Assembly: GCA_002269645.1 (NCBI GenBank)
Contig: NIVC01000475.1
Span: forward strand, 1-64,000
DNA length: 64,000 bases
DNA from: Macrostomum lignano
Lineage: Eukaryota
Direction of reading: 5' to 3'
A model generated the notes under the pieces. The model searched no databases. It worked only from the letters and a program-made list of their open reading frames with translations, and was not told the origin of the DNA. Below are positions 2 to 64,000 of this stretch, one piece after another (within the stretch, counting starts at the first letter, position 1; each line of letters opens with the position of its first letter). Made by a program: the position numbers and the translations under genes.

Positions 2-3000
2 ACATACAATGTAATGGCCTATACAGAAATCATGTCAATGATCTGGAAGCGGTTAAACGATAAAAACAAGAACTGGCGTCACGTTATAAAGCTTGGTGCT
101 GCTGGACTATCTAATTAAAACTGGCAGCGAGAGGGTGCCCAGCAATGCCAAGGAGAATCTCTTTGTTATTCAATCATTGCGCGATTTCCAATATATTGAG
201 GAGGCCCGCGATCACGGCCTGAATGTGCGCGAGAAAGCTAAGCAGCTGGTCGCTTTGTTGAAAGATGATGAAAGACTGCGGGCTGAGAGGCCAAGGTGTG
301 TACTGCTTGTCGCTGAGCAATCTGTCACTCTTCTCTGTATCACTGGGTACCTCTCCATGTCTCTGGTTATCTCATCTCTATGTCACTGGGTATCTCCATG
401 TCACTGGGTGTCTCCATCTCACTGGGTATCTCTTCTCTGTCTCTGGTATCTCTTCTCTGTGTCACTGGGTATCTCTTCTCTGTGTCACTGGGTATCTCTT
501 CTCTGTCACTGGGTATCTCTTCTCTGTGTCACTGGGTATCTCTTCTCTGTCACTGGGTATCTCTTCTCTGTGTCACTGTGTATCTCTTCTCTGTCACTGG
601 GTATTTCTTCTCTGTGTCACTGGGTATCTCTTCTCTGTCACTGGGTATCTCTTCTCTGTCACTGGGTATCTCTTCTCTGTGTCACTGGGTATCTTCTCTA
701 TGTCAATAGGTATCTTCTCTGTGTCACTGTGTATCTCTTCTCTGTCACTGGGTATTTCTTCTCTGTGTCACTGGGTATCTCTTCTCTGTCACTGGTATCT
801 CTTCTCTGTGTCACTGGGTATCTCTTCTCTGTCACTGGGTATCTCTTCTCTGTGTCACTGGGTATCTTCTCTATGTCAATAGGTATCTTCTCTGTGTCAC
901 TAGGTATCTCTTCACTACGCCATTATGTACATCTTATCGGTCTATAAGCAATCATTTTGTCTATGGGTATTTCTGTCTGTGTAGCCCTATTGCTAGCCCT
1001 ATAGTTCTGCATTATATTGTGTTCTTCACTCTGACAGGCCTTGCTAACCCGCGAGCGCCTGCACCAGGGTGTGGGGCACCACACCGGCTCTGGCAGCGGT
1101 CGCAGCCGCATGCGCGCGCCGGAGTTCGCCGGCAGCGGAGACGACCTGCCAGCCTCGCCCGTGCCGCTGCCGCTGTTACTGCCGGAGGCGGCGGCGGTGT
1201 ACACCAGGAGGCTGAGGACATCGAACTGCAGTTGGCGTTGGCACTGTCCAAGGAGGAGCATGAACAGGAGATGAGGCGAAGAGAGGCCGAAGGACTTAAA
1301 GAGGATATGAAGCTGAGGATGGCGTTGGAGGCCAGCAAGCGGATGAAGAGGTTTGAGTTGGCTCGTGTGCCTGGTTTCTAATTAAGCTGTCAATGAAAAG
1401 CAGTAATCTAATAGCATGGCGATTTCTAAATTTGCAGGAGCGTCAGAAGAAAGGGGCTACAGTTACTCGGCAGAAGGTATTTTGTTTTATTTGATTCATT
1501 CAAACCGTACTGAAAAAGTTGGGGGGTGGCAGCCTACTGAAGTACAGGGGCAGCCTACTGAAGTACAGGGCAGCCTACTGAAGTACAGTGAAGATTACCA
1601 GCCTACTGAAGTACAGGGGGGCAGTCTACTGACAGTGGGGTGGCAGCCTACTGAAGTACATGAGGGGTGGCAGCCTACTGAAGTACATGAGGGGTGGCAG
1701 CCTACTGAAGTACATGAGGGGGCAGCCTACACTGAAGTGCAGGGATATTTTACGTCTGTTCCATTCCACTGTCTATTTTATTTTCTATTTCTTCTTTCTA
1801 TTCCACCTCCACTTGCGCAGTCGGGAACTCTGGTCGACCTGATTGACACGTCGCTGTCGGCGGCTCCGGCCAACGCGCCCGATCCTTGGGCAAACTCCGC
1901 CCCACGGCCACAGCCTCCATTGGCGGCGGCGCCAGCGCCAGAGACCCTGGAATCTTGGCAGCGCCGACCCCTGGGCTACCGGCGCCACCGCTTCCGTGGG
2001 CGCCAATGGCTCTTCGTTTGGTGAGATAGAGATAGCCAAGACTCGCTTGATAGTTAGCTTTAGCCGCTCAGATCCTCAGCTGCTGGGCCACCAGCCTCCC
2101 AGATCTTCAGTTGCTGGGCCACCAGCCTCCCAGATCCTCAGTTACTGAGCCAGCCTCCCAGATCCTCCATTGCTGGGCCACCATCTTCCCATATCCTCAG
2201 TTGCTGGGTCACCAGCCTCCCAGATCCTCCATTGCTGGCCCACCAGCTTCCCAGATCCTCAGTTGCTGGGCCACCAGCCTCCCAGATCCTCAGCTGCTGG
2301 GCCACCAGCTTCCCAGATCCTCAGTTGCTGGGCCACCAGCCTCCCAGATCCTCAGTTTCTGGGCCACCAGCCTCCCAGATCCTCAGCTGCTGGGCCACCA
2401 GCTTCCCAGATTCTCAGTTGCTGGGCCACCAGCCTCCCAAATCCTCAGTTGCTGGGCCACCAGCCTCCCAAATCCTCAGTTGCTGGCCAGCCTCCCAGAT
2501 CCTCAGCTGCTGGGCCAGCCTCCCAGATCCTCAGCTGCTGGGCCAGCCTCCCAGATCCTCAGTTGCTGGGCCAGCCTCCCAGATCCTCAGCTGCTGGGCC
2601 AGCCTCCCAGATCTTCAGCTGCTGGGCCAGCCTCCCAGATCCTCAGTTGCTGGGCCATTCAGCCTCCCAGATCCTCAGTTGCTGGGCCATTCAGCCTCCC
2701 AGATCCTCAGTTGCTGGCCATTCAGCCTCCCAGATCCTCAGTTGCTGGGCCAGCCTCCCAGATCCTCAGTTGCTGGGCCAGTCTCCCAGATCCTCAGTTG
2801 CTGGGCCATTCAGCCTCTCAGATCCTCAGTTGCTGGGCCAGCCTCCCAGATCCTCAGTTGCTGGGCCATTCAGCCTCTCAGATCCTCAGCTGCTGGGCCA
2901 GCCTCCCAGATCCTCAGTTGCTGGGCCATTCAGCCTCCCAGATCCTCAGCTGCTGGGCCAGCCTCCCAGATCCTCAGCTGCTAGGCCAGCCTCCCAGATC

Positions 3001-15149: not shown

Positions 15150-35083
<19,934 letters not shown>

Positions 35084-35931: not shown

Positions 35932-46914
<10,983 letters not shown>

Positions 46915-48845: not shown

Positions 48846-51800
48846 TCACTTTAAAGGCCTCTTCAAAGAACGCCCGACTCCTGCAACTTAAATACTCGCA
48901 AATTGAAAAAATTGATTGATTTACTGAATTGAATTTTAGAAAGTGTCAAATATTTGCGTCCTCACCCAGATTTGGTGGGAAAGACTGTCGGCAAAAAATG
49001 ATGTCAAGCAATTTGCTTTGAAATCCGTTGCTATGGACACTAACCTCAGCCTTCAGTCGGTCATTGGTAGTTGCGTGCCGGACGTCGGGTGACTTCACGA
49101 GTAAAATGTGCTGGAGGAACAGCAGTTGGAAGCATCGAAAGTATGATTAAAGCACAGAATTTATGCAGACTCCCAAACCTTATTCAAACTGACCGTACCT
49201 TCCTCAGTTCGTGCACATCGCTAACCAAGACAACGCGCTCTCTTTTGATATCGTTGAAGCACGAGAAGTGGACTTTTACTTGACCTTTTTGAATTCCTAA
49301 AAAGTTTAAAATATTTTACCTGCAATTTTAAGTCAATTTTGAGAGTGCCTGGCCTAAAACAAATAGCGACGTTCGATCGTTTCGTAGAATAGATTATTCT
49401 CGTAAAAATACGCTCGTTGAGTCTAAAAAATTTGGAACTTAAAAAAGTGCTACCATTCCTACTAAAACTTTCCAAGAAACTAACTGCCCCGTCCGTCTAC
49501 TACTAGTGGTCCTTGATCAGACCTGCGGTGGAGGCCTTAGTGTGGATGGCGATCGTGCAGCCGCCATCCATTGGCGCTTCCGCCGGATTCAACGCGATGA
49601 CGTCAATGTTCTTCTTTTCCTCTAAAACACACATTTGTGGAATCATTCTGTACATGAACAGAACAACATGAGTCGATCAGAGTATCACAGAAACTCACTG
49701 TCACTGACGATCTTGTCACTAAACACTGTGCTAAGCAGCCATTCTCGATAGAAAATATCGCAATAGGTGAGCGAGAATGCGAGACGAATCTGAGCCAAGT
49801 TGGTCTGGGTGTACTTAGCTGACGGCCCTGTAGGACAATCACTGGGGGTCGGCACATCCCTGAGTCTGGCTTCCATGGCTTTCTCCATGCTCGCTTTGTT
49901 CTTCTTTGGCACACAGATCACGGACAGCCTGTCGAAGCTGAAAAATTCAAGTGCGTGGGAAACTTCGAGCATGCCTGCAAATCACTATAAGCAACCCTGT
50001 ACAACTAAACTGGATGACTCTTCCTAGGAAGCCTCAATGTTCAATTCGCTTCACTCCTCAGAAACAAAGCGAGGAGCGTAGCGAACATAGAGGCATCCTT
50101 GACTCTTTGCAAATAGTTTCTTCACTCTAATAGATAAACAACATTTCATTTTAAGTAGAGGCGGGTTGACAGTCTTCTTCTATATAACTAAATCTGAAAA
50201 GTTTCTATATATATATACAGTGTATATGTACATAATCCATTTTAAAGGAATTTATCCAACCGATTTTTTTCAAACTTGCACCATTCGATCAGAAATTCTT
50301 GCGAATCGGTACAGTTCTCTTGGCTAAGAGATTGCTTTATTTTAAAGGGATTCAATATTCGAAAAACTGTATTTTCCCTATCTAATTAGTGTATTTTTCT
50401 CGCAGTGAGAGCTCAATACGTCTACAGCCATAGTCTAAACTTCAATTCTTGAGCTGATACAATGAGTTATAAATAGTTATACCTAGCTTGTTAAATTTTA
50501 CAATTTATTATGAATATCTTCGTCTTCAACTTGTTTGAAACCTGAACTGATTGTCTGAATTAAAGCCGGGTGTTACAAAATGTGCATAATCACTTGAACA
50601 GAAATGCCTTGACAACATTGCGCTACGTTTAAAAGGGAATTGCTGAGATGTCAAGGCTTAAGAGGGAATTGCTGAGATGTCAAGGTCTAATGGGAATTGC
50701 TGAAATGTCAAGGCTTAGTGGGGAAATTCCAGAGATGTAAAGTTCTGGGGTGAATGGCTAAGATTTCAAGGCTTGCTGGGGTATAATTGCTTAGAAGTCA
50801 AGGCTTATTGTGGGAATTTTTGAGATATCCATTCTCACTGGGCGGAATTGCTGAGATATCAAGGCTCACCGGGGGGAATTGCTGAGATATCAAGGCTCAC
50901 CGGGGGGAATTGCTGAGATATCAAGGCTCACTATTGGTGGATAATCATTGGTGGAATTGCTGCGATATATAACTGTCTAATGGGTGCTGTTGTAAACTGT
51001 CTAACGAATGCTGTTGTAACTGTCTAACGGGTGCTGTTGTAACTGTCTAACGGGTGCTGTTGTAACTGTCTAACGGGTGCTGTTGTAACTGTCTAACGGG
51101 TGCTGTTGTAACTGTCTAACGGGTGTTGTTGTAACTGTCTAACGGGTGCTGTTGTAACTGTCTAACGGGTGCTGTTGTAACTGTCTAACGGGTGCTGTTG
51201 TAACTGTCTAACGGGTGCTGTTGTAACTGTCTAACGGGTGCTGTTGTAACTGTCTAACGGGTGCTGTTGTAACTGTCTAACGGGTGCTGTTGTAACTGTC
51301 TAACGGGTGCTGTTGTAACTGTCTAACGGGTGCTGTTGTAACTGTCTAACGGGTGCTGTTGTAACTGTCTAACGGGTGCTGTTGTAACTGTCTAACGGGT
51401 GCTGTTGTAAACTGTCTAACGGGTGCTGTTGTAACTGTCTAACGGGTGCTGTTGTAAACTGTCTAACGGGTGCTGTTGTAAACTGTCTAACGGGTGCTGT
51501 TGTAACTGTCTAACGGGTGCTGTTGTAACTGTCTAACGGGTGCTGTTGTAACTGTCTAACGGGTGCTGTTGTAACTGTCTAACGGGTGCTGTTGTAACTG
51601 TCTAACGGGTGCTGTTGTAACTGTCTAACGGGTGCTGTTGTAACTGTCTAACGGGTGCTGTTGTAAACTGTCTAACGGGTGCTGTTGTAACTGTCTAACG
51701 GGTGCTGTTGTAAACTGTCTAACGGGTGCTGTTGTAAACTGTCTAACGGGTGCTGTTGTAACTGTCTAACGGGTGCTGTTGTAACTGTCTAACGGGTGCT

Positions 51801-54366
51801 GTTGTAACTGTCTAACGGGTGCTGTTGTAACTGTCTAACGGGTGCTGTTGTAACTGTCTAACGGGTGCTGTTGTAAACTGTCTAACGGGTGCTGTTGTAA
51901 CTGTCTAACGGGTGCTGTTGTAAACTGTCTAACGGGTGCTGTTGTAAACTGTCACTGTCACTTTTGAAAAGAAAAGTGCTTGCTCGAAAAAATGTTTGGG
52001 ATACGCAAAGCAGGTCAGCCTGGTAATCTATATAACTAAATCTGAAAAGTTTCTGTTTGGATGTATGTAAATAATCCACTTAAAAAATTTAAATTTTTAT
52101 GTCCCGCAAAGCGGGTCTAATTGCTAGTATATACTAATGCTGATATTGCCAATGAAATGCTAATTCACGACCGTAGATAGGCGATAATTGACAACAAATT
52201 TCATCGTTTCCGACTCAGTATAAAAAATATTTTTCTCGACCGAGTTTGTCTATGGTAAAATCCTATTTCCCAAGCGTAAATGAAAAAAGCTGATCTTTGC
52301 GAAATCTGTTTGTTGTTAAATGGGGCTAGCAGCTAAAGCTTGGCGTGCTCTTGAAGAGGCTGGGTGTACCAACTGTTATTATTTTCACGGCTTGACTCAT
52401 CGTCAGTCCAGCTTGGTGTACTTGCGGGCGCAAAACTACCCCCCCCCTCAGACAGGGTCGACCGTGGGCTTCCAAGCTCAGCAAGATCAGCACGAACTCC
52501 CTAACACGTAATATACATGCGGGCAGCGAACATTTGATCTCACTCCAACGTGCTAAAGTGAGAGCCAGTCGACAAGCGGTAAACGCACTTCTAGGCTTAG
52601 GATCCCCAGAGGCATGATGCCTTTCCAGGCGGTCCATTTACCAGATAGGTTCATCTAGCTCATAGGCAGCTGATCTACCTAAATCAGCGGTCATCTACCT
52701 GAAAAACGGGCAGTTGAGTCTCTGGCAGGGACACACTAGAAACTTCAGGGCGAAAACTGTTCCTGTCCCTGAAATCAGTTCAGGGAGCACGATTTTGCAG
52801 TGGAAACCAGCCCTCCAGTGGCCCAGTCGCTCCTCGTGCCACTCACCAGATGTCCCAAACTGCTTTACCATCCAATGCATCAACAGACTTCTTCAGCTGG
52901 AAATATCCGTTGCTGCAGTGGTCTCCGTGCAGGTAGTACGGATGAGGAGCCTTCTCCTCGGCGCTCACGGTGCACACAGTCAGCTGCAGCTGCGAGTGCA
53001 CAGCTGGGTCGATGCCGCTGACGCGAACACTCACGAAGCTCTTGTTGCCATCGGTGGAGCTCCTGCCGAGCAGCAGGCCGCCAACTCTGCCGCTGTCCTT
53101 CTCGATCTCCGACTCGTAGCGAAATCGGTGATACAGAGCCGGCTGCTCCTCGATGGTCAGCGAAGGCGGCTGCAACTCAGCAATGTAGAGGTGCTCAGCA
53201 ATTCCAGTGTTGACGGGGGGTCCGAGAGGCCCGGAAAAGTTCGATTGATACTAGAAACGTTCATAGAGCAGTTGTTGTGGTTTTTCATGCACGCTTTGCT
53301 ATTTTCACATTTTAATTTTTTAGCTTTGTGAAATAATCCACTAATTATAATGCGCTCTGGATGAGGCTTCCATTCTTGAACCAGCTTCCACTACAGGTCT
53401 GCCTGCTTCCACTAAGTTAGAAATATATTGAATACTACTTCTTTTCTGCTCTTTTCTGTGAAAAAACGCAAATGTAAGGCCAGCAGCAATAACACTGCTT
53501 TTGCTGTACGAGATTCCTAACTGACGCTGTTTCTAAAAATAGCTCAGTGCAGTCCCTGTGTGTTCATTTTAAAGCGCTTTTTTGGCACGGCCAGGGAATT
53601 TCCGGGGATTTACTCTCTGCATATTACAAGGAACTTGCAGCTAACTAATGTTTTTAACTTAGATGTCTTTTGTCAACCTAAACCAAAATAAGTAAGTTTC
53701 ATTTCTGATTTCTTACCGGAAAATCAATTTGTATTCTCTTTAAGACTCAAGTTAAAACAATTTTTTTGCTTTGGACGTGCTTGGACTCAACCACAGGGAC
53801 ATCGGGGCGGTGACCAGGGCCCTCTCAGGCCCTGGCTCCTTTGACAGGCATCGTTATCTTCAGGGAATAGAGATCTGCCTCTCCGATGTCGAGAAGGCGA
53901 AGCAAGGGCTATCGGGCGAGCGACCATCCACCCTTCTGGACTCTCCAGAGGGGGGCCGCACTGCGGGCACCGGCACCACTGGATCTCCTGGCAATCACGC
54001 CGCAGCACCAGCTGTCTGTGATTGCCAGGAGCCAGCAGAATGGGCTGCAACGCCTTCTCGCTGTATCTGGACTCCCGGAGCCCCCGATGCCCGGAGCTAT
54101 GTCAAGTTACTTAAAGCTTTCAACTTTTAACTTTAAATGAATCGATTTCATTCTGTGATGTTTCTCACAAATTTAGTTAATAGCTTTCAACAGTTTACTG
54201 GAAATATTAATTTTTTTAGATTTACACAGAGCTACATAAGATTTACACCTGTAAAAAATTTAAAAACTTCATTAAAAAACGTCTTCAAAACCAGTTTTAA
54301 ATGAAAACTTTTGCAAAGAAATCAAAACGAATGAGAAGCAATACTTACGTTTATCCACTGGGCCAT
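48846..54366 (-). CDS. Rel-homology-domain (NF-kB-like) protein, copy A, ~345 aa
   Basis: Exons 54366-54349 (MAQWIN; the least certain), 53250-52847, 49937-49699, 49621-49523, 49296-49199, 49110-48966 and 48880-48846, with consistent phases (1038 nt). LTIEEQP..HRFRYESE, PHPYYLHGDHCSNG, FDRLSVICVPKK, IRLAFSL...VFSDKIVSD, IQKGQVKVHF, LLVKSPD and the basic tail LKRPLK*. Confidence 0.85.
50630..50960. repeat. Degenerate ~30 bp repeats GGGAATTGCTGAGATATCAAGGCTCACC
   Basis: About 9 copies seen. Confidence 0.85.
50970..51950. repeat. Minisatellite, 23 bp unit AACTGTCTAACGGGTGCTGTTGT
   Basis: Homogeneous array in the long intron of RHD copy A. Confidence 0.97.
52027..52127 (+). mobile_element. Minimal (101 bp) non-autonomous Helitron
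   Basis: 5' TC, subterminal hairpin CCCGC-AAA-GCGGG, 3' CTAG, inserted between A (52026) and T (52128), no TSD. Confidence 0.75.
53594..53613 (+). promoter_or_regulatory. Tandem kB-like sites GGGAATTTCC + GGGGATTTAC in an intron of RHD copy A
   Basis: First site is a perfect GGGRNWYYCC match; second has one mismatch. Confidence 0.45.
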
Positions 54367-54526
54367 TGATTATTTATCAAAGCAAACAACAAGGACTACT
54401 AGAATATAACGAAGTGGTCCTAGTGGTCCTTTACAAACAAATTTTCCTAAACTATCCGATTCACTAGTGTCCATCTCCATGCTAAAATATAATAATAAAA
54501 CGAATTTTAATCCGTGGTTGGACCAC

Positions 54527-54547
54527 GGTAAATCCCGGGGAATTCTC
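54527..54547 (-). promoter_or_regulatory. Second double kB-like motif (GAGAATTCCCCGGGATTTACC) upstream of the copy A start exon
   Basis: Near-identical to the 53594 motif, in the opposite orientation. Confidence 0.4.
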
Positions 54548-54565
54548 GTGAACAAAAGTTGTACG

Positions 54566-54572
<7 letters not shown>

Positions 54573-54637
<65 letters not shown>

Positions 54638-54638
54638 C
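54573..54638. repeat. (AG)n microsatellite
   Basis: Read directly. A shorter (AG)n lies at ~38352-38376. Confidence 0.97.
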
Positions 54639-55232
54639 AGGCAAAAAGCGGACACCCGATATGTACACCCGAAAAGTAGCTTCCTGACAGAAATAGCACT
54701 GTACAGTACAGTATACAGATACACTGATGCACAGATCAGGGGCTGTTTGTACAGATGAAGTTGTGCTTTGAACAGCGGGGAAAGAAAGAAAGCACGACAA
54801 GTAGTAGCTGGAAGCAAAACTTTTGGGTGAACCAAAACTTGCAGACGAATTTATTGTACGGTGGAGGAAAAAGTAAAAGAAAAAAACTGAGCAACAAACA
54901 AGAAGACATCTAGATAGGCTGACTCACGTACCCCACCAAAGCCAGCCACTTCAACCCCGCAGTTTAAACGCCTTTTCCACCAACACAGTGGCAATAGAAA
55001 CAATATATTTAGCTCATACTAAATTAGTATTTTATTAAGTACTAAATAAACTTCGCTTATTCAAAACCAAAATCCTATGCATCATTTTTTTCATAGACGC
55101 TTGTACATGTACGATCCATGTATAGAGGCTTTGAATATCAGACTTGAGTCATAATGTTCATAATCGAAGACTGTCTTGAATGAAAGTCAACGCTTATATT
55201 TAAGAGCTTGACGTGAGCTGCTTACGTCATCA

Positions 55233-57750
55233 TTATCGTCGCAGGCTCTTCAGAGAAGTTCGGGATTCTGGCAGAAACACAATACAGAGGCTCTCGCTTT
55301 TGAATCCGTCGCTTTGGACAGTGACCTCGCATTTCATCCGGTCCTTGAAACCTGAACTCCTCACATCGGGCGTCCTCACTAGCAAGAGGTGCTGGAAGCA
55401 AATTAATTTTACTATTAAAAGTGCTCCTGTAATGCAGAACATATAAAAGGGTTTGCGTTTACCTTCTTAACTACCTCGACGTCCGCCACGAACTCAGTTT
55501 GGCTTCCAGTGGCTCTATTGGTAACTGCAAAATGCACCTTTATGTTACTCCTACAAATGCCTGCAAAAGAAGCATTTTAGTTTGAAGGATCAACATTAAA
55601 TCCAATGTAAAAGTAGCTGAAATATCTTGGATAGCTTCGAAACAAGGCGCACCTGTTGTAGGGGTGGCGGTGTGGATCGCCAGCATGCTGCCATCCCCCA
55701 TTAGTACTTCCGCTGGATTCAGACAATCGATCTCAATTCTCTTTTTTAGATCTGAAATTATTTCGAGATATTGATAAAAAATCATCAACTGAGAGTTGAA
55801 GACAGAATCGAGAAACTCACTTTCACCGACGATCTCGTCGCTAAACACCGTACTCAGATGCCATTCTCTACCGAAGACATCGCTGAATGAGAGCGAGAAC
55901 GCCAGACTAATGCGATCCAAGCTTTTGCTTGTGTATTGAGTTGATGTAGCTGTGGGATCTGAAACAGCACAAAGTTGCCAAAGTTGCAAGCAAAAATTTC
56001 TTTTTGATCAAAAACTCTATGAACATCCTTATGTGACGTGGCACACAAAAGTGGAGGGTCGAACCTCGCGCAGGCACACCGAGACCGAAGGCTTGTTTGC
56101 CTTCGTCAGTCAGCAATAGCCACACCCCGTCATCTCCCACCACTCTTAGAGCGCACAGACGTTTCTTTAATGCTGCCATTTCTTTTATGGCGACCAAAGA
56201 CCATGTATACACAAGATGGGCCACAAGGGAATTTAAGATCTATGATGGCGAAATTTTTCACACTATGTTAGAGATTTTACGATTCAAATCTTTATTCAGC
56301 TACTTTTCACAGTAATCTAAATTGAAATATTTAGTTGATAATTAGGAATGCCAAGAGCAGACCAAAAATCAGCCAAAAAGGACTTCAGATTTCTTAATTT
56401 ACACCCAGTCTTAACGAAAGGGAGGCCAACCGAGCAACACTGTCAAATTTTCAAAGTTTATAAATGGAATAAATGGTGTCACGACGCAACATTTGTTCAA
56501 AGGTTTTTAAGTTATAAGCGTACTCAATCTGCATCCGTACGTGAGATAGAAGCTTGCATGGCACTCATGATTCGCTCCGTTAATTAATCAATGCAAGTAG
56601 GTAAAAACGTCTCACAATCTCTGAGCTGTGGAAAGCTTCTACGTCTGTCTTCCAGGCTTTTCTCGATTTCCATTTTCCTTAACTTTGGCACGCAGATGAC
56701 GGCCAGTCTATCAAAGCTGGAAAATGAGAAATCGTTTTCGTCTTGTATTGTTTAAAATGAAACTACCGGAACTGCTAAAAGAAAAGTGAATATACAACTA
56801 TATTACGAAAACCATAATTAGAAGCTTGTTTTAGCTTAGTTTATTGACTCACGTGATCTCCCATTCACCACCAGAATCTCTCAATGCATCAACAGACTTC
56901 TTCAGCTGGAAATATCCGCTGCTGCAGTGGTCCCCGTGCAGGTAGTACGGATGAGGAGCCTTCTCCTCGGCGCTCACGGTGCACACAGTCAGCTGCAGCT
57001 GCGAGTGCACAGCTGGGTCGATGCCGCTGACGCGAACTCTCACGAAGCTCTTGTTGCCATCGGTGGAGCTCCTGCCGAGCAGCAGGCCGCCAACTCTGCC
57101 GCTGTCCATACGGATATCCGACTCGTAGCGATATCGGTAGAACCGAGCCGGCTGCTCCTCGATGGTCAGCGTCGGCGGCTGCAGCTCCTTCAGGCTGAGG
57201 ATCTGGGGCTCCTCTTGAAGCAGAAAGTCTCTGCCAATCACCTGGGTCGTCGTTGCCTTCAAAACGAGTAGAGGCTGGCTTGAACTTTCCATTTTTACAT
57301 CTCGAAACGTCAGCATTGATCGATGCGTTTCAGCGGCATTAAAAAGTAATCTTGCCTACTTGTTACTGACGATGATGCCGAAGGCATTGTACCAGGGTGC
57401 ACGCAACACTCCAGCAAATATTAATGACATTATCACTGGTAACTCTATCTAATCGTCCCTTCAAATATACATCACATGGTGGCACAGCTACATGTAAGCT
57501 ATAAACCCTGATAATTAAGTAGCTGAAGGCCTGTCATGAGTAAGAGTACATTTTTGAATTTTTGAATTTCATAAACCCTAGCCTAGAACAGTTATGCAAT
57601 ATCGAGTCGAAAAAGAGGTCTGGATAATGCATGACCTGTCTTAGATCACATCAAAACAATTAGCTAGCTCTTGGGCAGGTGGAGTATCAACCTGGAAATT
57701 GGTTGAAAACTATTATCCAGCTATTATATTGGCAGGAAGCAACTCACCAT
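55233..57750 (-). CDS. Rel-homology-domain (NF-kB-like) protein, copy B, ~333 aa
   Basis: Exons 57750-57748 (ATG only), 57256-56853, 56716-56616, 55958-55821, 55751-55653, 55560-55463 and 55391-55233 (1002 nt, phases consistent). EEQPARFYRYRYESD, PHPYYLHGDHCSSG, FDRLAVICVPK, NIKVHF and LLVRTPD. Confidence 0.88.
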
Positions 57751-58049
57751 CTTGTCTGTAAATTTCAATAAGAAACAAATTCAATAGATTTCAAGAGCAG
57801 TTGATCTTGATAGTCAGGATAAGGTACCAAAATGCATTTTATGCCCGCAGGGCGAAGTACCTTGTACGATTGTGCAGTGTAGTGGCCGTAGGAGCGCACC
57901 CCACTGCGAGCCTTTCACGAACGCTCGTAGCAAACATTGTCCCTTCTTTCAACTTCTATAAATAAATTTGACGTAAGAATTAAATTCTGGTGTGCACAAC
58001 AAGTGCCGAAGCAACGAACATAATCGCGGCGCAGACGGGCAGACGACCA

Positions 58050-58290
58050 CGTTCGCACGCTGCCAGCGGTTCACCTACCTCGGCGGTCTTGTGCCCCACG
58101 TGAAAGAGGACCTCCGACGGCGCAGAGGACTTGCCTGGGCGGCCTTCCGTTCGATTTGGGTCGTCCTCCAGTCCGAAGCGCTGCCCGACCGCCAGAGAGC
58201 TCGGCTGTGGCCTGGCGGTGGTCGAAACCGTCCTGCATACTAAGCCGAGACGTGGACGCTGACGGCTACGCTAATCACGGCTGCTACGCG
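58050..58290 (+). mobile_element. Degraded LINE (RTE-like) fragment from the region C-terminal to RT
   Basis: FTYLGGLV...DLRRRRGLAWAAF...R, then after a frameshift AVVETVL..AETWTLT. This matches the F.YLG...RI..A..AF...LLYG.ETW pattern of non-LTR ORF2. Confidence 0.7.
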
Positions 58291-58694
58291 CGGCCTTTCG
58301 AGCTGTCGAGAGCGTCGGGAAAGAGGCTCTGTACCTCTGTACAGCTTATAGAATTTCGAGTGCAATTTACAGGTGGATTCTGGGCAGCTGCAGCGCCCGT
58401 CCATCATCCATCATCCATCATCATCGGCAACTTCAACTTGCGGGCCACGTGATCCAGTCCGAGGGCTACTGCCCCCAACCTGTTCAGGACGCCTTGCTGC
58501 ACATCTTGCAGGGCCCGTTCAGGCAGGCTCAGGCCCAAACCCGCCGATACATGAACGTGGACTGCCTGCTGTGCGACGCAGGGGCACCCGACACTGCCAA
58601 CGGGGCGGACTTTCGAATTCCGCTCTCAAGCTCTGCGGCGCGCCATCTGACGCACCCTCACTGTGACCTTACATGCGGGGCCGCGAATTTACCC

Positions 58695-58852
58695 TGCATC
58701 ACCACAGGGATCTCCATCAGCATCACCATTGGAATTAACCCTGCATCACCACAGGGATCTCCATCAGCATCACCATTGGAATTAACCCTGCATCACCACA
58801 GGGATCTCCATCAGCATCACCATTGGAATTAACCCTGCATCACTATTGGGAT
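58695..58852. repeat. About three copies of a 47 bp unit CCCTGCATCACCACAGGGATCTCCATCAGCATCACCATTGGAATTAA
   Basis: Read directly. Confidence 0.93.
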
Positions 58853-59364
58853 CTCTTTTTTGCCGAAAAAGAAATTAAACCGAAATTCACTCGAACTTTA
58901 TTGAAGGATCGATTGATTGATTGATCGAACTTGATTGATTTACCACTACTTGATTGATTGAAGGATTGAAGGAAATCCTGGCTATAAGATTTGTGTTGGG
59001 TAGTGGTAAATAAGCCTGTCATAAAACAGAAGAAGGATTGATTTTTCGTGATAGTGCTTTCTTTAGAAAATCGGCACAATCGAACGCACGATGGTCAAAG
59101 TTACGATCAAATTAATACACGAGCCATTGATACATGAGTCATGCAGAAAATCTTTAGGCAGAAAGAACATCTCCGTGATTTCGAACCAGTGCAAAATAAT
59201 ATTATAATAAGAATATTCAAAACCTGTTTATTAACTATTAAAAAAAATTTAAGGCTAAAAGCCTACTGAGAAATAAAAAACTTTTTTCGCAGCTTATAGA
59301 ATTTCGAGTGCAATTTACAGGTGGATTCTGGGCAGTTGCACAAAGCTTCAGCTCATTAGCTGTG

Positions 59365-61554
59365 TCAAATTGGCCGCGCTCTCTTCACAGCAGTTCCCGA
59401 TTCTGCAACAATCCAAAAGTGTGTTGAAAAATAAATTTTAAAACTCGCAAAGGAAAAACTAAATGTTTGTAACTTTGAAACTTTCTTAAAAACATAACGT
59501 ACGTGGAGGTGTTCCGGTGTTCCACTTAAAGCTGTTGGGCAGATCTCTTAGAAACACAATGCTCCGCTCCTCACTCTTCCATTCATGGCTATGGACAACA
59601 ACCGAACATTTCTGCCGTTCACTTTCACTGACAGTTGCGTGCCTCAGATCGGGAACCCTCACAAGCAGTAGGTGCTGGAAGTTAAACATGTCAAAAGGCA
59701 TTAAAATTACACCACTTAAGGAACGAAAGAACACTACATCCTCATTAAATAGTGTCCTTTCTGTAATACCTAGATACGGTTAGAAGATAAGCATATCACC
59801 TTTTTAACAACGTCGACATCGACCACGTACTCAGTTCGGTCTTCCGTGGCTTTATTGGTGTCAATGAAATGTACCTTTATGTCACTCTTCTGAATGCCTG
59901 AAATTCGAACAGTAGGAATCACGGTATTTATTTTGTGTGAGAATTTCAGCAGAAAATTAGTTATTAAATACTCGTAGTGTTGAAACCGAGCGCACCTGTT
60001 GTAGGGGTGCTGGTGTGGATCGCCAGCATGCTGCAGCCCTCCATTGGCACTTCCACAGGGTTCAGAAAATCGACCTGAATAAGCTTTATTTCCTCTAAAA
60101 ATTGTGAAACGCATTAACTAATAACCAATATTGACTGAGAGTTCAGAACGAAAATGAGACACTCACTCTCACTGACGATCGGGTCGCTGAACACCGTGCT
60201 CAGCTGCCCTTTTCTACCAAAGAAATCGACGAATGAGAGCGAGAACGCCAGTCGAATGCGACCCAAGTTTTTGGTTGTGTATTGAGTTGATGGAGCTGTG
60301 GGACCTGAAACAGCGCCAAGTTTGTACGTAAGCTTCAATAAATTGGACTTCAACGGCGAAAACGAGACGATATGAAAAGATAAATGCTCACAATCTGGAA
60401 GCCGAGGAACATTTCTGCGTCTGGCTTCCATGTGGTCTTCGATGCGCTTCTTTGTGGTTTGAGAGACAGCCAGGCTCTCAAAGCTGAATAGTCAATCATG
60501 AATTTTCACTGCTTTAATTCGAGAATAAAAATCTCACTGTACCATCAAATCTGACAATTAATAAATTAAATATTGTCGCCAACAAATATTAAATTGACCT
60601 TTCATGTGTCAGCCATGAATTTTTACTCACGTGATCTCCCATTCACCACCAGAATCTCTCAATGAATCAACAGACTTATTCCGCTGAAAATATCCGTTGC
60701 TGCAGTGGTCCCCGCGCAGGTAGTACGGATGAGGAGCCTTCTCCTCGGCGCTCACGGTGCACACAGTCAGCTGCAGCTGCGAGTGCACAGCTGGGTCGAT
60801 GCCGCTGACGCAAACTCTCACGAAGCTCTTGTTGCCATCGGTGGAGCTCCTGCCGAGCAGCAGGCGGCCAAGGTGGTAGCTTGCTTGCTGAGACTCGTAG
60901 CGAAATCCGTAGAACCGAGTCGGCTGCTCCTCAATGGTCAGCGACGGCGGCTGCGGCTCTTTCAGGCTGAGGATCTGGGGCTCCGCTTCAAGCAGAATGT
61001 CTCTACCAATCAACGGGGTTGTCGTTGCCTTCAAAACGAGTAGAGGCTGGCTTGAACTTTTGATTTTTACATCTCAAAACGTCAGCATTAATCGATGCGT
61101 TTCAGTTACATTAAAAAGTGCTTAATCGTCACGGACGATGATGCGAAGGCATTTTGCAAGGGTACCCGGACCCTCCAGCCAGTATTTACTACCACTTAGT
61201 AATTCTAGCTAATCGTACTTTTATATGCTTACAAAGTACATTGCATGGTGGCACAGCTAAGCTATAAATCCTGAAAATTCAATAGCTGAAGGCCTGTTAT
61301 AAGTGTGCGAAGGAGGAACAGTGTACCCTTTGACAGTGTGAAGCTTCTGAATTCCAGTAACCCTAGAACATGTAAGCTTTTTCATGTAGCAAATGAGGTC
61401 TGGATAAGGCATGACCTTGTCTTAGGAAATCACGTGAAACAATTAGCTCGCTCTTGGGCAGGTGAAGTTTCAGCCTGGAAAAGTTTCTTTAAAACTGATT
61501 GAAAACTATGAGCTTATTATCTAGCTAGCATTTTGGCAGGAAGCAACTCACCAT
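59365..61554 (-). CDS. Rel-homology-domain (NF-kB-like) protein, copy C, ~345 aa
   Basis: Exons 61554-61552 (ATG only), 61028-60631, 60483-60392, 60304-60167, 60094-59996, 59897-59800, 59674-59503 and 59402-59365 (1038 nt, phases consistent). EEQPTRFYGFRYESQ, PHPYYLRGDHCSNG, IRLAFSL, IQKSDIKVHF and the tail VKRARPI*. Confidence 0.88.
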
Positions 61555-62205: not shown

Positions 62206-63038
62206 TCAACTTGGCGGCGCTCTCTTTTGAGCAGTTCCGGATTCTGCAACAATGCAAAAGTGTCAAAAGTGTATTTGAAAATTTATTTGAAAAGTCGCGA
62301 AGGACAAAACTAAAGTTTGCTAACTTTGAAACTTTCTTAAAAACATGAGAACGTACTTGGCGGTGTTCTGTGGTTCCACGTAGAGCTGTTGAACAGATCT
62401 CTTTCCAACACAATGCTGAGCTCCTCACTCTTCCCTCCGTGGCTGTGAACAACAACCGAATATTTCCGCCGCTCACTGACATTTGCAGATCTCCAATCGG
62501 GAGTCTTCACCTGAAGTAGGTGCTGGAAGTCAAACGTGTCAAGAGAATTCCAAAATTTAGCTATTTCTTGGTCTAAACACAAAAGCGCCAGACAGTAACA
62601 GCATTAGCTGGTAAATTAAAATGCACAAGAGAGAATTTAATATTACATTCCTTAAGGATGGTACAAACGCTACATCCCCATATACGAGCGTAATAGTCAG
62701 GCAAAATTTTCCTTTCTGTACTATTTAGATACGAGCGTAGAAGCTAAGCATATTACCTTTTTAACTTCTTTGACGTCGGCAACGAACTCTGTTCGGTTTC
62801 CCGTGGTTTCATTGGTTAATGTGAAATGTACCTTTATGTCTTTCTTCTGAATGCCTGAAATTCAAACAGTGTGCCTCACAACTTTTGCATATATTTAGGG
62901 CGATCAATTCTGCCGAAATAACCTTGAAACCGAGCGCACCTGTTGTAGGGGTGGTGGTGTGGATCGCCAGCATGCTTCCGCCTTCCTTTGGCACTTCCGC
63001 TGGGTTCAGACAGTCGACCCGAATAGTCTTATTTTCTT
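62206..63038 (-). CDS. RHD copy D, IPT (dimerisation) exons and tail only; DNA-binding exons not found in the window
   Basis: Exons 63038-62940, 62854-62757, 62522-62357 and 62243-62206, with sizes 99/98/166/38 matching the paralogues. IQKKDIKVHF, LLQVKTPD and the tail QKRAPPS*. Intron similarity to copy C stops at ~63068. Confidence 0.8.
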
Positions 63039-64000
63039 CTGAAAAACGATGAAATGCATTGACTAATGGTAGATTATATATATGGCTTCATTACTTGAGT
63101 AATGATCACAGTCACGAGTGGCGAAGCTTAATAAGCTCACTTAATAGCATAGTTTAATAGCGTTGTTAATGCTCAAACGGAAACGATAGTCTAAAGGATC
63201 AGACCCTTGTACGAGTATATATGGGTTCATAATTCAATAATGATCAGCAGCCACGCTATTAAGTAACGCCAGCGGATTGGTTGATTTAGGAAAAACATTG
63301 GATTACGGGACGTTTAGTTATACCATAGGCTAACGAATAGTGATCAGTGAATAGTGATGGTAGAAAATCAGTCACAAAGTCGAAGAGAGGAATTAGAACT
63401 AGAAAAGTGAAGCAAGAGAAAAACGAAAAGCAAAACTCCTTCAATGAATAGGAAGAATCTGCCAGTGGACAGCCTAAATGGAGTCTCGTCAGCAGAGTTG
63501 GATTTTGTAAGTGAACTGAGTGCCGTGAACCGCGGCTCGGATAGAAATCTTGAAGCTGGATTTTATTGTTTCTGACAAGAAAAGCGTAATTGATTTCCAT
63601 ATTTCAGATTTCAGAGACTGCTGATGAGGCTGCTGCTTGAACTGCGAATTATCGAACTGCATATGCATTAACGTTTAGAAAACTTGTGAACTGTCGAATC
63701 CACCCAGTTGCGACCGCCGTTAGCAACAATTACGATTAGGCTACAACAACAACGGAGCAAATTAAAGAAATCGACACCATAAGTGCGACTGTAATGCATC
63801 AAGCTCAAGTGGATATTATCATATTTTTATATATTATTCATAATATATAATATGCCCTACGTTCATATTATGTTATACGTTCACGTCCATATTACTCGTA
63901 TATGGAAATCAAGGTGGCTTGAAAACTTCATTATGAAGTGCCTTAAAAAGATGTTGTCTATATGACAAGGACCGTTATTGACTGACAGTTCAGAACGAAA

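What the first reader, a model, noticed from the sequence alone, without database searches (positions are those of the whole stretch)
53105..60920. The DNA-recognition loop has diverged between RHD paralogues while neighbouring sequence is nearly identical
Seen: A = EQPALYHRFRYESE, B = EQPARFYRYRYESD, C = EQPTRFYGFRYESQ, with a further 2-aa deletion in C just downstream. The following ~45 residues (LLLGRSSTDGNKSFV...PHPYYL.GDHCS.GYFQ) are almost invariant at both DNA and protein level. Established: in NF-kB the RxRYxxE residues contact bases, and the Cys before the Glu is redox-sensitive. Inference: A keeps canonical contacts, B has E>D, and C has lost one Arg and the Glu and may be a weak or non-binding dominant-negative partner. 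All three have Ser in place of the redox Cys. This looks like diversification of specificity combined with homogenisation of the adjacent block.
Basis: partly seen in the sequence, partly recalled or inferred. Interest (0 to 1): 0.72.

Follow-up and report, generated by a model that had tools for sequence, protein, structure and literature searches.

The report
Flatworm Rel-homology gene array, homogenised exon
The window holds a tandem array of NF-kB-like (Rel homology domain) genes of the flatworm Macrostomum lignano in which about 290 bases of the first Rel-homology exon are kept almost identical among old paralogues, most likely by gene conversion. The DNA-reading loop is the one patch where three of the copies still differ.

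Summary
The three peptides lie on the minus strand: A at 53148-53107, B at 57157-57116, C at 60929-60888. Each is followed by 68 codons that differ at only 3-8 of 204 bases.

The window is M. lignano contig NIVC01000475.1. The genes are short, divergent Rel/Dorsal-type proteins that consist of little more than the Rel homology domain (RHD). They belong to at least 16 copies in three arrays.

The unusual part is the block, not the loop:
- Outside the homogenised segment, synonymous divergence (dS) is 0.5-1.5 between the window copies and saturated for some family pairs.
- Inside the block, dS is 0.02-0.04.
- Loop divergence (14-29%) equals or falls below the gene-wide background (26-38%).

Most paralogues share one identical loop (ARFYRFRYESEIEKDSGRVGG). 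Copies A, B and C are the exceptions:
- A's "YH" and C's shorter loop match more distant M. lignano RHD genes, so they look like ancestral remnants that escaped conversion.
- B's changes (F>Y, E>D, EK>RM) and C's changes (R>G, E>Q) are derived.

Loop dN/dS is about 1-3 but not significant. The C lineage shows relaxed constraint. The best reading is localised concerted evolution with a patchy, possibly selected, escape of the loop. Divergence in binding specificity is untested.

The parts
48946..53169 (-). RHD gene A (most divergent of the window's copies). Exons: 53169-52847, 49937-49699, 49621-49523, 49296-49199, 49110-48946 (stop 48948-48946). The 5' end is unresolved.
   Evidence: All junctions are GT-AG and the frame is intact. 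The UniProt M. lignano proteins P0001/P0002 are about 90-100% identical to these exons. There is no in-frame ATG upstream and no ATG|GT micro-exon within 1.4 kb. The M. lignano spliced leader ends in ATG (PMC8629364), so trans-splicing at TTGCAG|CCG (53170|53169) is possible; this is inference. A lacks the intron that splits the second and third RHD-coding exons of B and C. Its intron 1 is 2.9 kb.
53077..53148 (-). Copy A recognition loop (L1): EQPALYHRFRYESEIEKDSGRVGG
   Evidence: It differs from the family consensus only in an 8-nt island (CTG TAT CAC versus CGG TTC TAC). 'YH' matches the outgroup genes P0012/13/17/21.
52873..53076 (-). Copy A homogenised block (LLLGRSS...SVDAL, 68 codons)
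   Evidence: 3/204 differences from B and 8/204 from C. dS is 0.02-0.04.
55233..57750 (-). RHD gene B, equal to the annotated BOX15_Mlig012767g1 (P0004, 333 aa). Exons: ATG micro-exon ending 57748, then 57256-56853, 56716-56616, 55958-55821, 55751-55653, 55560-55463, 55391-55233.
   Evidence: From residue 2 onward P0004 matches the corresponding part of my splice model. The locus look-up places the gene at record 55233-57750, and the record is the window. Pfam RHD_DNA_bind E=1.8e-12.
57086..57157 (-). Copy B recognition loop: EQPARFYRYRYESDIRMDSGRVGG
   Evidence: The loop DNA is identical in the positional counterpart c1505_d on contig NIVC01001505.1 (0/72 differences). F>Y, E>D and EK>RM are derived relative to all outgroups.
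56882..57085 (-). Copy B homogenised block
59486..61554 (-). RHD gene C (no matching protein was returned by the family search). Exons: ATG micro-exon 61554-61552, then 61028-60631, 60483-60392, 60304-60167, 60094-59996, 59897-59800, 59674-59486.
   Evidence: GT-AG throughout and the frame is intact. It keeps the ATG|GTGAGT micro-exon homologous to B's. A TGA lies upstream of 61028, in the intron, and so does not matter. There is a 9-nt in-frame deletion in exon 60483-60392 relative to all other copies.
60864..60929 (-). Copy C recognition loop: EQPTRFYGFRYESQQASYHLGR (2 codons shorter)
   Evidence: The same loop type occurs in c1505_c and, as a variant, in c109_c, P0003 and P0010. Its length equals that of the outgroup genes.
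60660..60863 (-). Copy C homogenised block
62337..64000 (-). 3' part of RHD gene D. Exons in the window: 63038-62940, 62854-62757, 62522-62337. The 5' exons lie beyond the window, at record 66388-63985.
   Evidence: tblastn of P0008/P0005 against L001. D's loop, outside the window, is the family consensus minus one codon (ARFYRFRYESEIE-DSGRVGG).

Best explanation
The region is part of a tandem array of lineage-specific genes for short, RHD-only Rel/Dorsal-type transcription factors in Macrostomum lignano. The array has at least six genes on this contig, and at least 16 copies occur in three arrays.

A segment of about 290 nt in the first RHD exon (QPPSLTIEEQP ... QLKKSVD) encodes the first strand, the DNA-recognition loop L1 and the following strands of the N-terminal subdomain. 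Non-reciprocal exchange (gene conversion) within and between the arrays keeps this segment nearly identical at the DNA level. The other exons diverge freely, up to saturated synonymous divergence.

One loop allele (ARFYRFRYESEIEKDSGRVGG) has spread to most paralogues. The window's A, B and C are the copies in which a short patch inside the loop is not overwritten:
- A keeps an ancestral 'YH' island.
- C keeps an older, shorter 3' half of the loop and has derived R>G and E>Q changes.
- B carries derived F>Y, E>D and EK>RM changes.

Shown: the mosaic divergence pattern, its family-wide extent, and the stability of loop types between positional counterparts.

Inferred: that conversion is the mechanism; that loop patches persist because tracts are patchy and/or because selection keeps distinct DNA-reading heads; and that C is under relaxed constraint rather than acting as a specialised inhibitor.
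For: 1. dS mosaic. In the window, exons 2-6 have dS 1.26 (A-B), 1.50 (A-C) and 0.57 (B-C), against block dS of 0.02-0.04. Across 15 copies, rest-of-gene dS runs from 0.06 to saturated while block dS stays at 0-0.14, median 0.045.
2. The loop DNA is identical (0 syn, 0 non-syn) between copy D and c109_P9, c109_b and c109_d, whose remaining exons have dS above 1.7 or saturated.
3. Control for protein constraint. In the sister M. lignano RHD genes (P0012/14/16/17/21) the block-equivalent is only 35-58% identical when the rest is 21-40% identical. In this subfamily it is 90-97% against 42-78%.
4. Block variants follow location, not orthology. Asp at codon 53 is shared by c109_P9, c109_b, c109_d and c109_P6, which belong to three deeply diverged clades on one contig. 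Met at codon 47 is shared by c109_b, c109_d and c109_P6. All six copies on the window's contig have Gly53, although B's counterpart c1505_d has Asp.
5. Loop types follow position in the array. B and c1505_d have identical loops, and C and c1505_c differ by 1 nt, although their blocks differ at 3 and 7 sites.
6. GC3 is 0.71-0.80 in the homogenised segment against 0.54-0.62 in the other exons. This fits GC-biased conversion.
7. Run-length permutation tests give p<=1e-4 for all three window pairs.
8. In B versus C the whole exon is 90-100% identical, with a sharp dip to 58-66% at 57151-57077. The 5' flank (60-75%) and intron 1 (40-50%) are diverged.
9. RHD identity.
Against: - Homogenisation stops at or near the exon borders. 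This would also fit selection on the exon sequence or an RNA-mediated process.
- No conversion event has been caught directly, because only one genome assembly and no population data are available here.
- The number of informative block sites that show sharing by location is small.
- The three contigs may be duplicated-genome counterparts or redundant haplotigs of a polyploid assembly, so some 'paralogue' comparisons are not independent.
- Whether the loop patches persist by chance or by selection cannot be decided. Counts are small: for B versus the consensus loop, Nd is about 4.5-8.5 depending on the copy compared (5.5 against the exact consensus) and Sd is about 0.5.
Confidence: 0.75

Rival explanations
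1. One reading: after homogenisation, positive (diversifying) selection changed base-contacting residues of L1, so that A, B and C read different kB-like sites. On this view C is a weak-binding or non-binding dominant-negative partner.
For: - Across the 16 copies, variable nucleotide columns are 33/72 in the loop against 35/198 in the block (p=6e-6). Without the C-type copies the counts are 20/72 against 30/198 (p=0.02).
- Changes are clustered and mostly non-synonymous: 26 to 3.
- B versus the consensus loop gives dN 0.09-0.17 against dS 0.03.
- B's and C's changes at the Glu and the first Arg are derived relative to all but one outgroup gene.
- B-type and C-type loops are preserved between positional counterparts while the block changed.
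Against: - dN/dS above 1 is not significant (N:S in loop versus block p=0.12).
- A's patch and C's loop length are ancestral-like, not novel.
- C-type loop dS (0.15-0.25) matches C's background divergence from its clade (0.19-0.26). That fits a patch that was simply never converted.
- The C lineage has dN/dS of about 1 across the gene, its counterpart is frameshifted, and C has an extra deletion in a DNA-contact segment.
- No binding data exist.
Confidence: 0.3
2. No conversion takes place. The block is conserved by unusually strong purifying selection on the protein, or on the nucleic acid itself (codon usage, splicing enhancers, RNA structure, an antisense product).
For: Near-identity is confined to the exon. 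Long antisense ORFs overlap the block.
Against: - Synonymous sites are as conserved as non-synonymous ones: block dS 0.02-0.04 and dN 0.013-0.039.
- The few block changes are close to the neutral N:S ratio (25:10).
- The same region in the sister RHD genes is only 35-58% identical.
- There is no Rfam match.
- The antisense ORFs are expected from the GC-rich codon composition.
- Variants are shared by genomic location across deep clades.
Confidence: 0.07
3. C, and perhaps A, are decaying or non-functional copies. On this view their loop differences are simply unconstrained drift in genes that conversion repairs only in part.
For: - C against c1505_c: dN 0.10, dS 0.10.
- c1505_c has a 2-nt insertion that shifts the frame in exon 2.
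- C has a 9-nt deletion in exon 2, plus R>C and H>R in the block.
- The protein search returned no product matching A, C or D from this assembly.
- A has no identifiable start codon.
Against: - All exons of A and C are in frame with canonical splice sites.
- C keeps the ATG micro-exon and its donor site.
- A-type and C-type exons appear in UniProt gene models from the other assembly (P0001/2, P0003, P0010).
- Open reading frames survive about 10% divergence without stop codons.
Confidence: 0.3
4. Assembly or polishing artefact: near-identical exon copies were produced when reads from different paralogues were collapsed.
For: M. lignano is a hidden polyploid with a redundant, repeat-rich long-read assembly (PMC10468722 abstract).
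Against: - The pattern recurs in 16 copies on three contigs. Each copy has private substitutions, and the flanks and introns are distinct.
- Independent gene models from the earlier assembly show the same loop types and the same block (P0001-P0003, P0010).
Confidence: 0.02

Closest known systems
Class II Rel/NF-kB proteins (vertebrate RelA/p65, c-Rel, RelB; insect Dorsal/Dif)
   Same: - The two-domain Rel homology region is present. RHD_DNA_bind is significant.
- The best sequence matches among solved structures are p65 (2e-9), c-Rel and RelB.
- The best non-Macrostomum relatives are Dorsal-like insect proteins at about 30% identity.
- The L1 motif R-x-R-Y-x-x-E is kept in A and in the family consensus.
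   Different: - The proteins are very divergent, at about 18-21% identity to the solved structures in the fold alignments.
- Ser replaces the redox-sensitive Cys.
- L1 is 5 residues longer than in p65, or 3 longer in C.
- The proteins end a few residues after the dimerisation domain. No transactivation region, ankyrin repeats or obvious KRKR-type nuclear localisation signal were seen, but these were not searched for systematically.
- Pfam RHD_dimer falls below threshold (E=0.04).
Divergent RHD genes of planarians (seven in Schmidtea mediterranea; PMC13563047)
   Same: These are flatworm RHD genes on long branches, hard to assign to NF-kB classes and without a demonstrated immune role.
   Different: No tandem array or exon-limited homogenisation is mentioned in the passages of that paper that I read. 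No planarian protein ranked above the insect Dorsal-like proteins among the hits I identified, and most lower-ranked hits were left unidentified.
Concerted evolution with variable DNA-contact positions, as in PRDM9 and KRAB zinc-finger arrays (from my own knowledge)
   Same: Repeated DNA-binding modules are homogenised by conversion or unequal exchange, while the residues that read bases stay variable.
   Different: There the units are repeats inside one gene, and positive selection at the contact positions is statistically established. Here the units are exons of separate genes, most copies share one loop, and selection is not shown.
Exon-limited gene conversion between old tandem duplicates (for example globin, opsin and RHD/RHCE blood-group genes; from my own knowledge)
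   Same: There is mosaic divergence: a short tract with near-zero dS inside otherwise old paralogues. GC enrichment of the tract is also shared.
   Different: Here one tract is shared by at least 16 copies in three arrays, and it covers the DNA-recognition part of a transcription factor.

Membership tests
Rel homology domain (NF-kB/Rel/NFAT superfamily) | Significant match to the N-terminal RHD DNA-binding domain profile | tested here: met
   PF00554 on full proteins: A E=6.8e-17 (62 bits), B 1.8e-12, C 4.1e-12. The cut-off is 27 bits, and the match covers profile positions 1-166 of 169. Exon 1 alone gives E=1.5e-11 to 2.3e-6.
Rel homology domain (NF-kB/Rel/NFAT superfamily) | C-terminal Ig-like (IPT) dimerisation domain following the DNA-binding domain | tested here: inconclusive
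   PF16179 RHD_dimer reaches only E=0.04 (14 bits against a 28.3-bit cut-off) in C and P0008, and is absent in A and B. However, the AlphaFold model of B has pLDDT 80-89 in this part. Foldseek aligns 305-310 columns to full RelA RHD chains at E=3e-14, and aligns the C-terminal part to the NFAT1 C-terminal RHD domain with TMt 0.80.
Rel homology domain (NF-kB/Rel/NFAT superfamily) | Recognition-loop motif R-x-R-Y-x-C-E with base-contacting Arg, Arg, Tyr and Glu | tested here: inconclusive
   Aligned to p65:
- A and the family consensus have R-F-R-Y-E-S-E. All four contacts are kept and Cys is replaced by Ser.
- B has R-Y-R-Y-E-S-D.
- C has G-F-R-Y-E-S-Q, so two contacts are lost.
The feature is met for A, partly met for B and not met for C.
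Rel homology domain (NF-kB/Rel/NFAT superfamily) | Sequence-specific binding to kB-like DNA as a dimer | not testable with these tools
   This needs EMSA, protein-binding microarray or SELEX with recombinant proteins.
Class I NF-kB (p50/p105-type) | C-terminal ankyrin-repeat (IkB-like) region and glycine-rich region | tested here: not met
   The proteins end 10-25 residues after the dimerisation domain. The Pfam scan finds no ankyrin repeats. A published survey reports no p50/p105 in Platyhelminthes (PMC11432056).
Concerted evolution by gene conversion | A tract whose synonymous divergence is far below that of the rest of the same genes | tested here: met
   Block dS is 0.02-0.04 against 0.57-1.5 in the window. 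Across the family it is 0-0.14 against up to saturated. Permutation p<=1e-4.
Concerted evolution by gene conversion | Tract variants shared by genomic neighbours across orthology groups (tree incongruence) | tested here: met
   Codon 53 Asp and codon 47 Met are shared by contig-109 copies from three deep clades. All six contig-475 copies have Gly53, although B's counterpart has Asp. There are few informative sites, so support is moderate.
Concerted evolution by gene conversion | Not explained by protein-level constraint on that region | tested here: met
   In the sister M. lignano RHD genes the block-equivalent is 35-58% identical while the rest is 21-40% identical. Block N:S changes are near the neutral ratio at 25:10.
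Positively selected specificity-determining loop | dN/dS significantly above 1 in the loop | tested here: inconclusive
   Loop dN/dS is about 0.75-1.2 on the loop segment and 1.1-1.7 on the core loop between the window copies. It is about 3-5 for B against consensus-loop copies. Counts are tiny. Loop versus block N:S gives p=0.12.

The most novel reading that the evidence does not exclude
The family has a shared 'reading head'. Conversion keeps the DNA-recognition half of the RHD identical in a dozen or more paralogues, so that they all read one site, while their dimerisation and regulatory halves diversify. A few paralogues (A-type, B-type, C-type) are held outside this homogenisation by selection, because their altered base-contact residues give them different specificities or make them decoy partners. 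That would be a combinatorial Rel network that arose independently in a flatworm lineage.
Probability: 0.2. Interest if true: 0.65.

Novelty: new member of a known kind. Interest (0 to 1): 0.42.

Why it matters
Flatworms are usually described as lacking clear NF-kB genes. This locus shows that M. lignano, a regeneration and stem-cell model with working transgenesis, carries a large, lineage-specific expansion of RHD-only genes.

It also gives an unusually clean example of exon-limited concerted evolution in a transcription-factor family. The tract that is homogenised is the one that reads DNA, and the only patches that escape lie in the recognition loop.

If the loop variants differ in binding, the array would be a natural experiment on how the specificity of a Rel network evolves. 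If they do not, the locus is a textbook case of how conversion can mimic 'conserved block plus hypervariable loop' and mislead selection scans.

Tried and rejected
- The word-indexed protein search with exon 1 of B alone found only one protein. An alignment query was needed to reach the family.
- A look-up of the contig encoding P0001 found nothing.
- I first thought B's ATG at 57316 was the start and that C was broken by a TGA four codons later. This was rejected: the annotated B protein starts from an ATG micro-exon at 57750-57748, spliced to 57256, and C keeps the homologous micro-exon.
- I first suspected that the initial Met of B came from the spliced leader. That is rejected for B, but it remains the only idea for A.
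- An NFAT-like assignment, suggested by Ser/Thr at the Cys position, was rejected. The best sequence and fold matches are RelA, c-Rel and RelB.
- The AlphaFold model has low confidence in L1 (pLDDT below 50 at residues 37-56 and 63-69). It was therefore not used to place the loop residues on DNA.
- The Rfam scan of 46-64 kb found nothing.
- Literature searches found no description of the M. lignano RHD family.
- Copy c109_f lacks detectable exons 4-6 within 6.4 kb and was left out of the rest-of-gene comparisons.

Full report
**1. What is there**

They sit in the first large exon of three tandem genes. A fourth gene (D) starts beyond the window's end, and only its last three exons lie inside it.

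The window is bases 1-64000 of contig NIVC01000475.1 of the Macrostomum lignano assembly GCA_002269645.1.

I built splice models for A, B and C. All junctions are GT-AG and all frames are open.
- B: from residue 2 onward my model matches the annotated protein BOX15_Mlig012767g1 (P0004, 333 aa). Its CDS starts from a micro-exon ending in ATG at 57750-57748, spliced to 57256.
- C: it keeps the homologous ATG|GTGAGT at 61554-61552.
- A: it has no identifiable start. The M. lignano spliced leader ends in ATG (PMC8629364), so trans-splicing at 53170|53169 is possible but not shown.

**2. What the proteins are**

- Pfam RHD_DNA_bind matches over nearly its whole length: A 6.8e-17, B 1.8e-12, C 4.1e-12.
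- The best solved relatives are p65/RelA (2e-9), c-Rel and RelB.
- An AlphaFold model of B has moderate quality (pLDDT 64.6, and 80-89 in the C-terminal domain). Its top 39 structural matches are all RHD chains, with RelA best at 3e-14.
- The proteins stop shortly after the dimerisation domain, so they are RHD-only.
- L1 is 5 residues longer than in p65, or 3 longer in C.
- That these positions contact bases, and that the Cys is redox-sensitive, is established knowledge of p50 and p65 recalled from memory. It was not tested here.

**3. The real anomaly is the block**

Nei-Gojobori estimates for the window copies:

| Region | dS | dN |
|---|---|---|
| Exons 2-6 | 1.26 (A-B), 1.50 (A-C), 0.57 (B-C) | 0.29-0.44 |
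| 68-codon block | 0.02-0.04 | 0.013-0.039 |
| Loop segment | 0.12 / 0.36 / 0.22 | 0.15 / 0.27 / 0.28 |

In raw base differences:

| Pair | Loop | Block | Exons 2-6 |
|---|---|---|---|
| A-B | 13.9% | 1.5% | 37.8% |
| A-C | 28.8% | 3.9% | 37.5% |
| B-C | 27.3% | 3.4% | 25.8% |

- The loop is much denser in changes than the block (p=1e-4 to 1e-7).
- The loop is not denser than the rest of the gene, and in A-B it is less dense.
- Identical runs of 96-104 nt exceed all 10,000 permutations.
- In B versus C the whole exon is 90-100% identical, with one sharp dip to 58-66% at 57151-57077. The 5' flank and intron 1 are at 40-75%. In that pair the loop really is an island inside a homogenised exon.

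**4. Family context**

An alignment-based search found only M. lignano proteins. Fetching their contigs gave 16 copies carrying the block:
- six in a row on the window's contig (P0005, P0008, D, C, B, A);
- six on NIVC01000109.1;
- four on NIVC01001505.1.

Across 15 copies, rest-of-gene dS runs from 0.06 to saturated, while block dS stays at 0-0.14.

Most copies share one loop, ARFYRFRYESEIEKDSGRVGG. Its DNA is identical between D and c109_P9, c109_b and c109_d, whose other exons have dS above 1.7 or saturated. The loop is therefore normally part of the homogenised tract. That tract spans about 290 nt, from QPPSLTIEEQP to QLKKSVD.

Block variants follow location:
- Asp53 and Met47 are shared by contig-109 copies from three deep clades.
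- All six contig-475 copies have Gly53.

Loop types follow position in the array:
- B and c1505_d have identical loops.
- C and c1505_c differ by 1 nt in the loop.
- Yet the blocks of these two pairs differ at 3 and 7 sites.

GC3 is 0.71-0.80 in the tract against 0.54-0.62 elsewhere.

A second, more distant set of M. lignano RHD genes (P0012-P0022) serves as a control. There the block-equivalent is only 35-58% identical when the rest is 21-40% identical. Protein constraint therefore cannot explain 90-97% identity together with near-zero dS.

**5. Where the loop variants come from**

Judged against those outgroup genes:
- A's 'YH' before the first Arg is the ancestral state (RYHRFRY, EYHRFRY, KYHRFRY). 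The consensus 'FY' is derived.
- The shorter length of C's loop equals the outgroup length. The '2-aa deletion in C' is therefore more likely a 2-aa insertion in the allele that later spread.
- The synonymous divergence of C's loop from the consensus (0.15-0.25) matches C's background divergence from its clade (0.19-0.26). This fits a patch that was never converted.
- Derived changes are C's R>G and E>Q, and B's F>Y, E>D and EK>RM.

Across the 16 copies, variable columns are 33/72 in the loop against 35/198 in the block (p=6e-6). Without the C-type copies they are 20/72 against 30/198 (p=0.02). Non-consensus codon states are 26N:3S in the loop against 25N:10S in the block (p=0.12). There are also in-frame indels in the same few codons: a shared 2-codon gap in C and c1505_c, a one-codon gap in c109_c, and one-codon gaps in D and c109_f. 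The loop is thus the most changeable part of the tract, but positive selection is not demonstrated.

**6. Status of C**

C against its positional counterpart c1505_c has dN 0.10 and dS 0.10. B against c1505_d has 0.02 and 0.07. c1505_c has a 2-nt insertion that shifts the frame in exon 2. The window's C has a 9-nt deletion in the same exon, in the segment that aligns with p65's CVKKRD DNA-backbone contacts. It also has R>C and H>R in the block. This points to relaxed constraint. It is compatible with, but does not support, a dominant-negative role.

**7. Verdict**

'Divergence of the loop' is better described as incomplete homogenisation plus a few derived changes at contact residues.
- The functional claims remain untested.
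- I found no description of this family in the literature. A 2026 paper notes seven divergent RHD genes in a planarian (PMC13563047), and a survey reports no p50/p105 in flatworms (PMC11432056).
- This is a new member of known kinds, both as a Rel-type gene family and as a case of exon-limited concerted evolution. Interest is moderate.

Noticed in passing
window 50949-52015 (intron 1 of gene A): There is about 1 kb of a 23-nt tandem repeat in three blocks. It accounts for much of A's 2.9-kb first intron, which is only about 140 nt in B and C.
   Followed up: no
window 49937-49699: Gene A lacks the intron that splits the second and third RHD-coding exons of B (56616/55958) and C (60392/60304). 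This is an intron loss in A or an intron gain in the other lineage.
   Followed up: partly
window 46013-46396; 54540-54650; 58685-58855: Other simple repeats lie between the RHD genes: a 16-nt tandem repeat with about 24 units, a (GA)n microsatellite that reads as SLSLSL/RERERE in the ORF list, and three copies of a 47-nt repeat.
   Followed up: no
window 23100-27900, minus strand: There are retroelement ORFs: a zinc-knuckle gag-like ORF (26589-27863) and an 806-aa ORF with reverse transcriptase and RNase H domains (24337-26757). This looks like a Ty3/gypsy-type LTR retrotransposon. It was not analysed further or reconstructed.
   Followed up: no
window 35932-43783, plus strand: A class C (metabotropic-glutamate-like) GPCR gene sits next to the RHD array. 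It has ANF_receptor (35932-37434), NCD3G (41110-41880) and 7tm_3 (43079-43783) exons.
   Followed up: no
window 93-947, plus strand: An ORF carries the C-terminal half of an ENTH (epsin-type) domain at the window's start.
   Followed up: no
L004 17046-17120 (contig NIVC01001505.1, copy c1505_c): The positional counterpart of gene C has a 2-nt (GC) insertion in exon 2 that shifts the frame. It could be a real pseudogene or a long-read indel error. The older-assembly model P0003 reads through a similar shifted frame.
   Followed up: partly
proteins P0003 and P0010 (UniProt A0A1I8II91, A0A1I8HPZ0): Gene models from the earlier M. lignano assembly fuse two neighbouring RHD genes into one chimeric protein. 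P0010 joins C-type exon 1 to B-type exon 1, so the array is mis-annotated there.
   Followed up: no
proteins P0012-P0022 (contigs of 986, 1110 and 439 kb): There is a second array of more distant M. lignano RHD genes, present in three copies of the array. It shows no exon-1 homogenisation. One member (P0014) also has Gln for the first contact Arg and Asp for the Glu.
   Followed up: partly
clade of copies P5, P8, D, C, P6, P7, c1505_a, c109_c: Closely related copies (dS 0.07-0.26) have dN/dS of about 0.5-1 across exons 2-6. This is much higher than in the B pair (about 0.3) or the c109_b/d pair (about 0.2). It points to fast protein evolution or relaxed constraint in the youngest part of the family.
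   Followed up: no
protein P0001 versus window 49199/48880: The UniProt A-type model P0001 skips the last dimerisation-domain exon (49110-48946) and splices to a short exon near 48880 (ESGVL*), whereas P0002 includes that exon. This could be alternative splicing or a prediction error.
   Followed up: no
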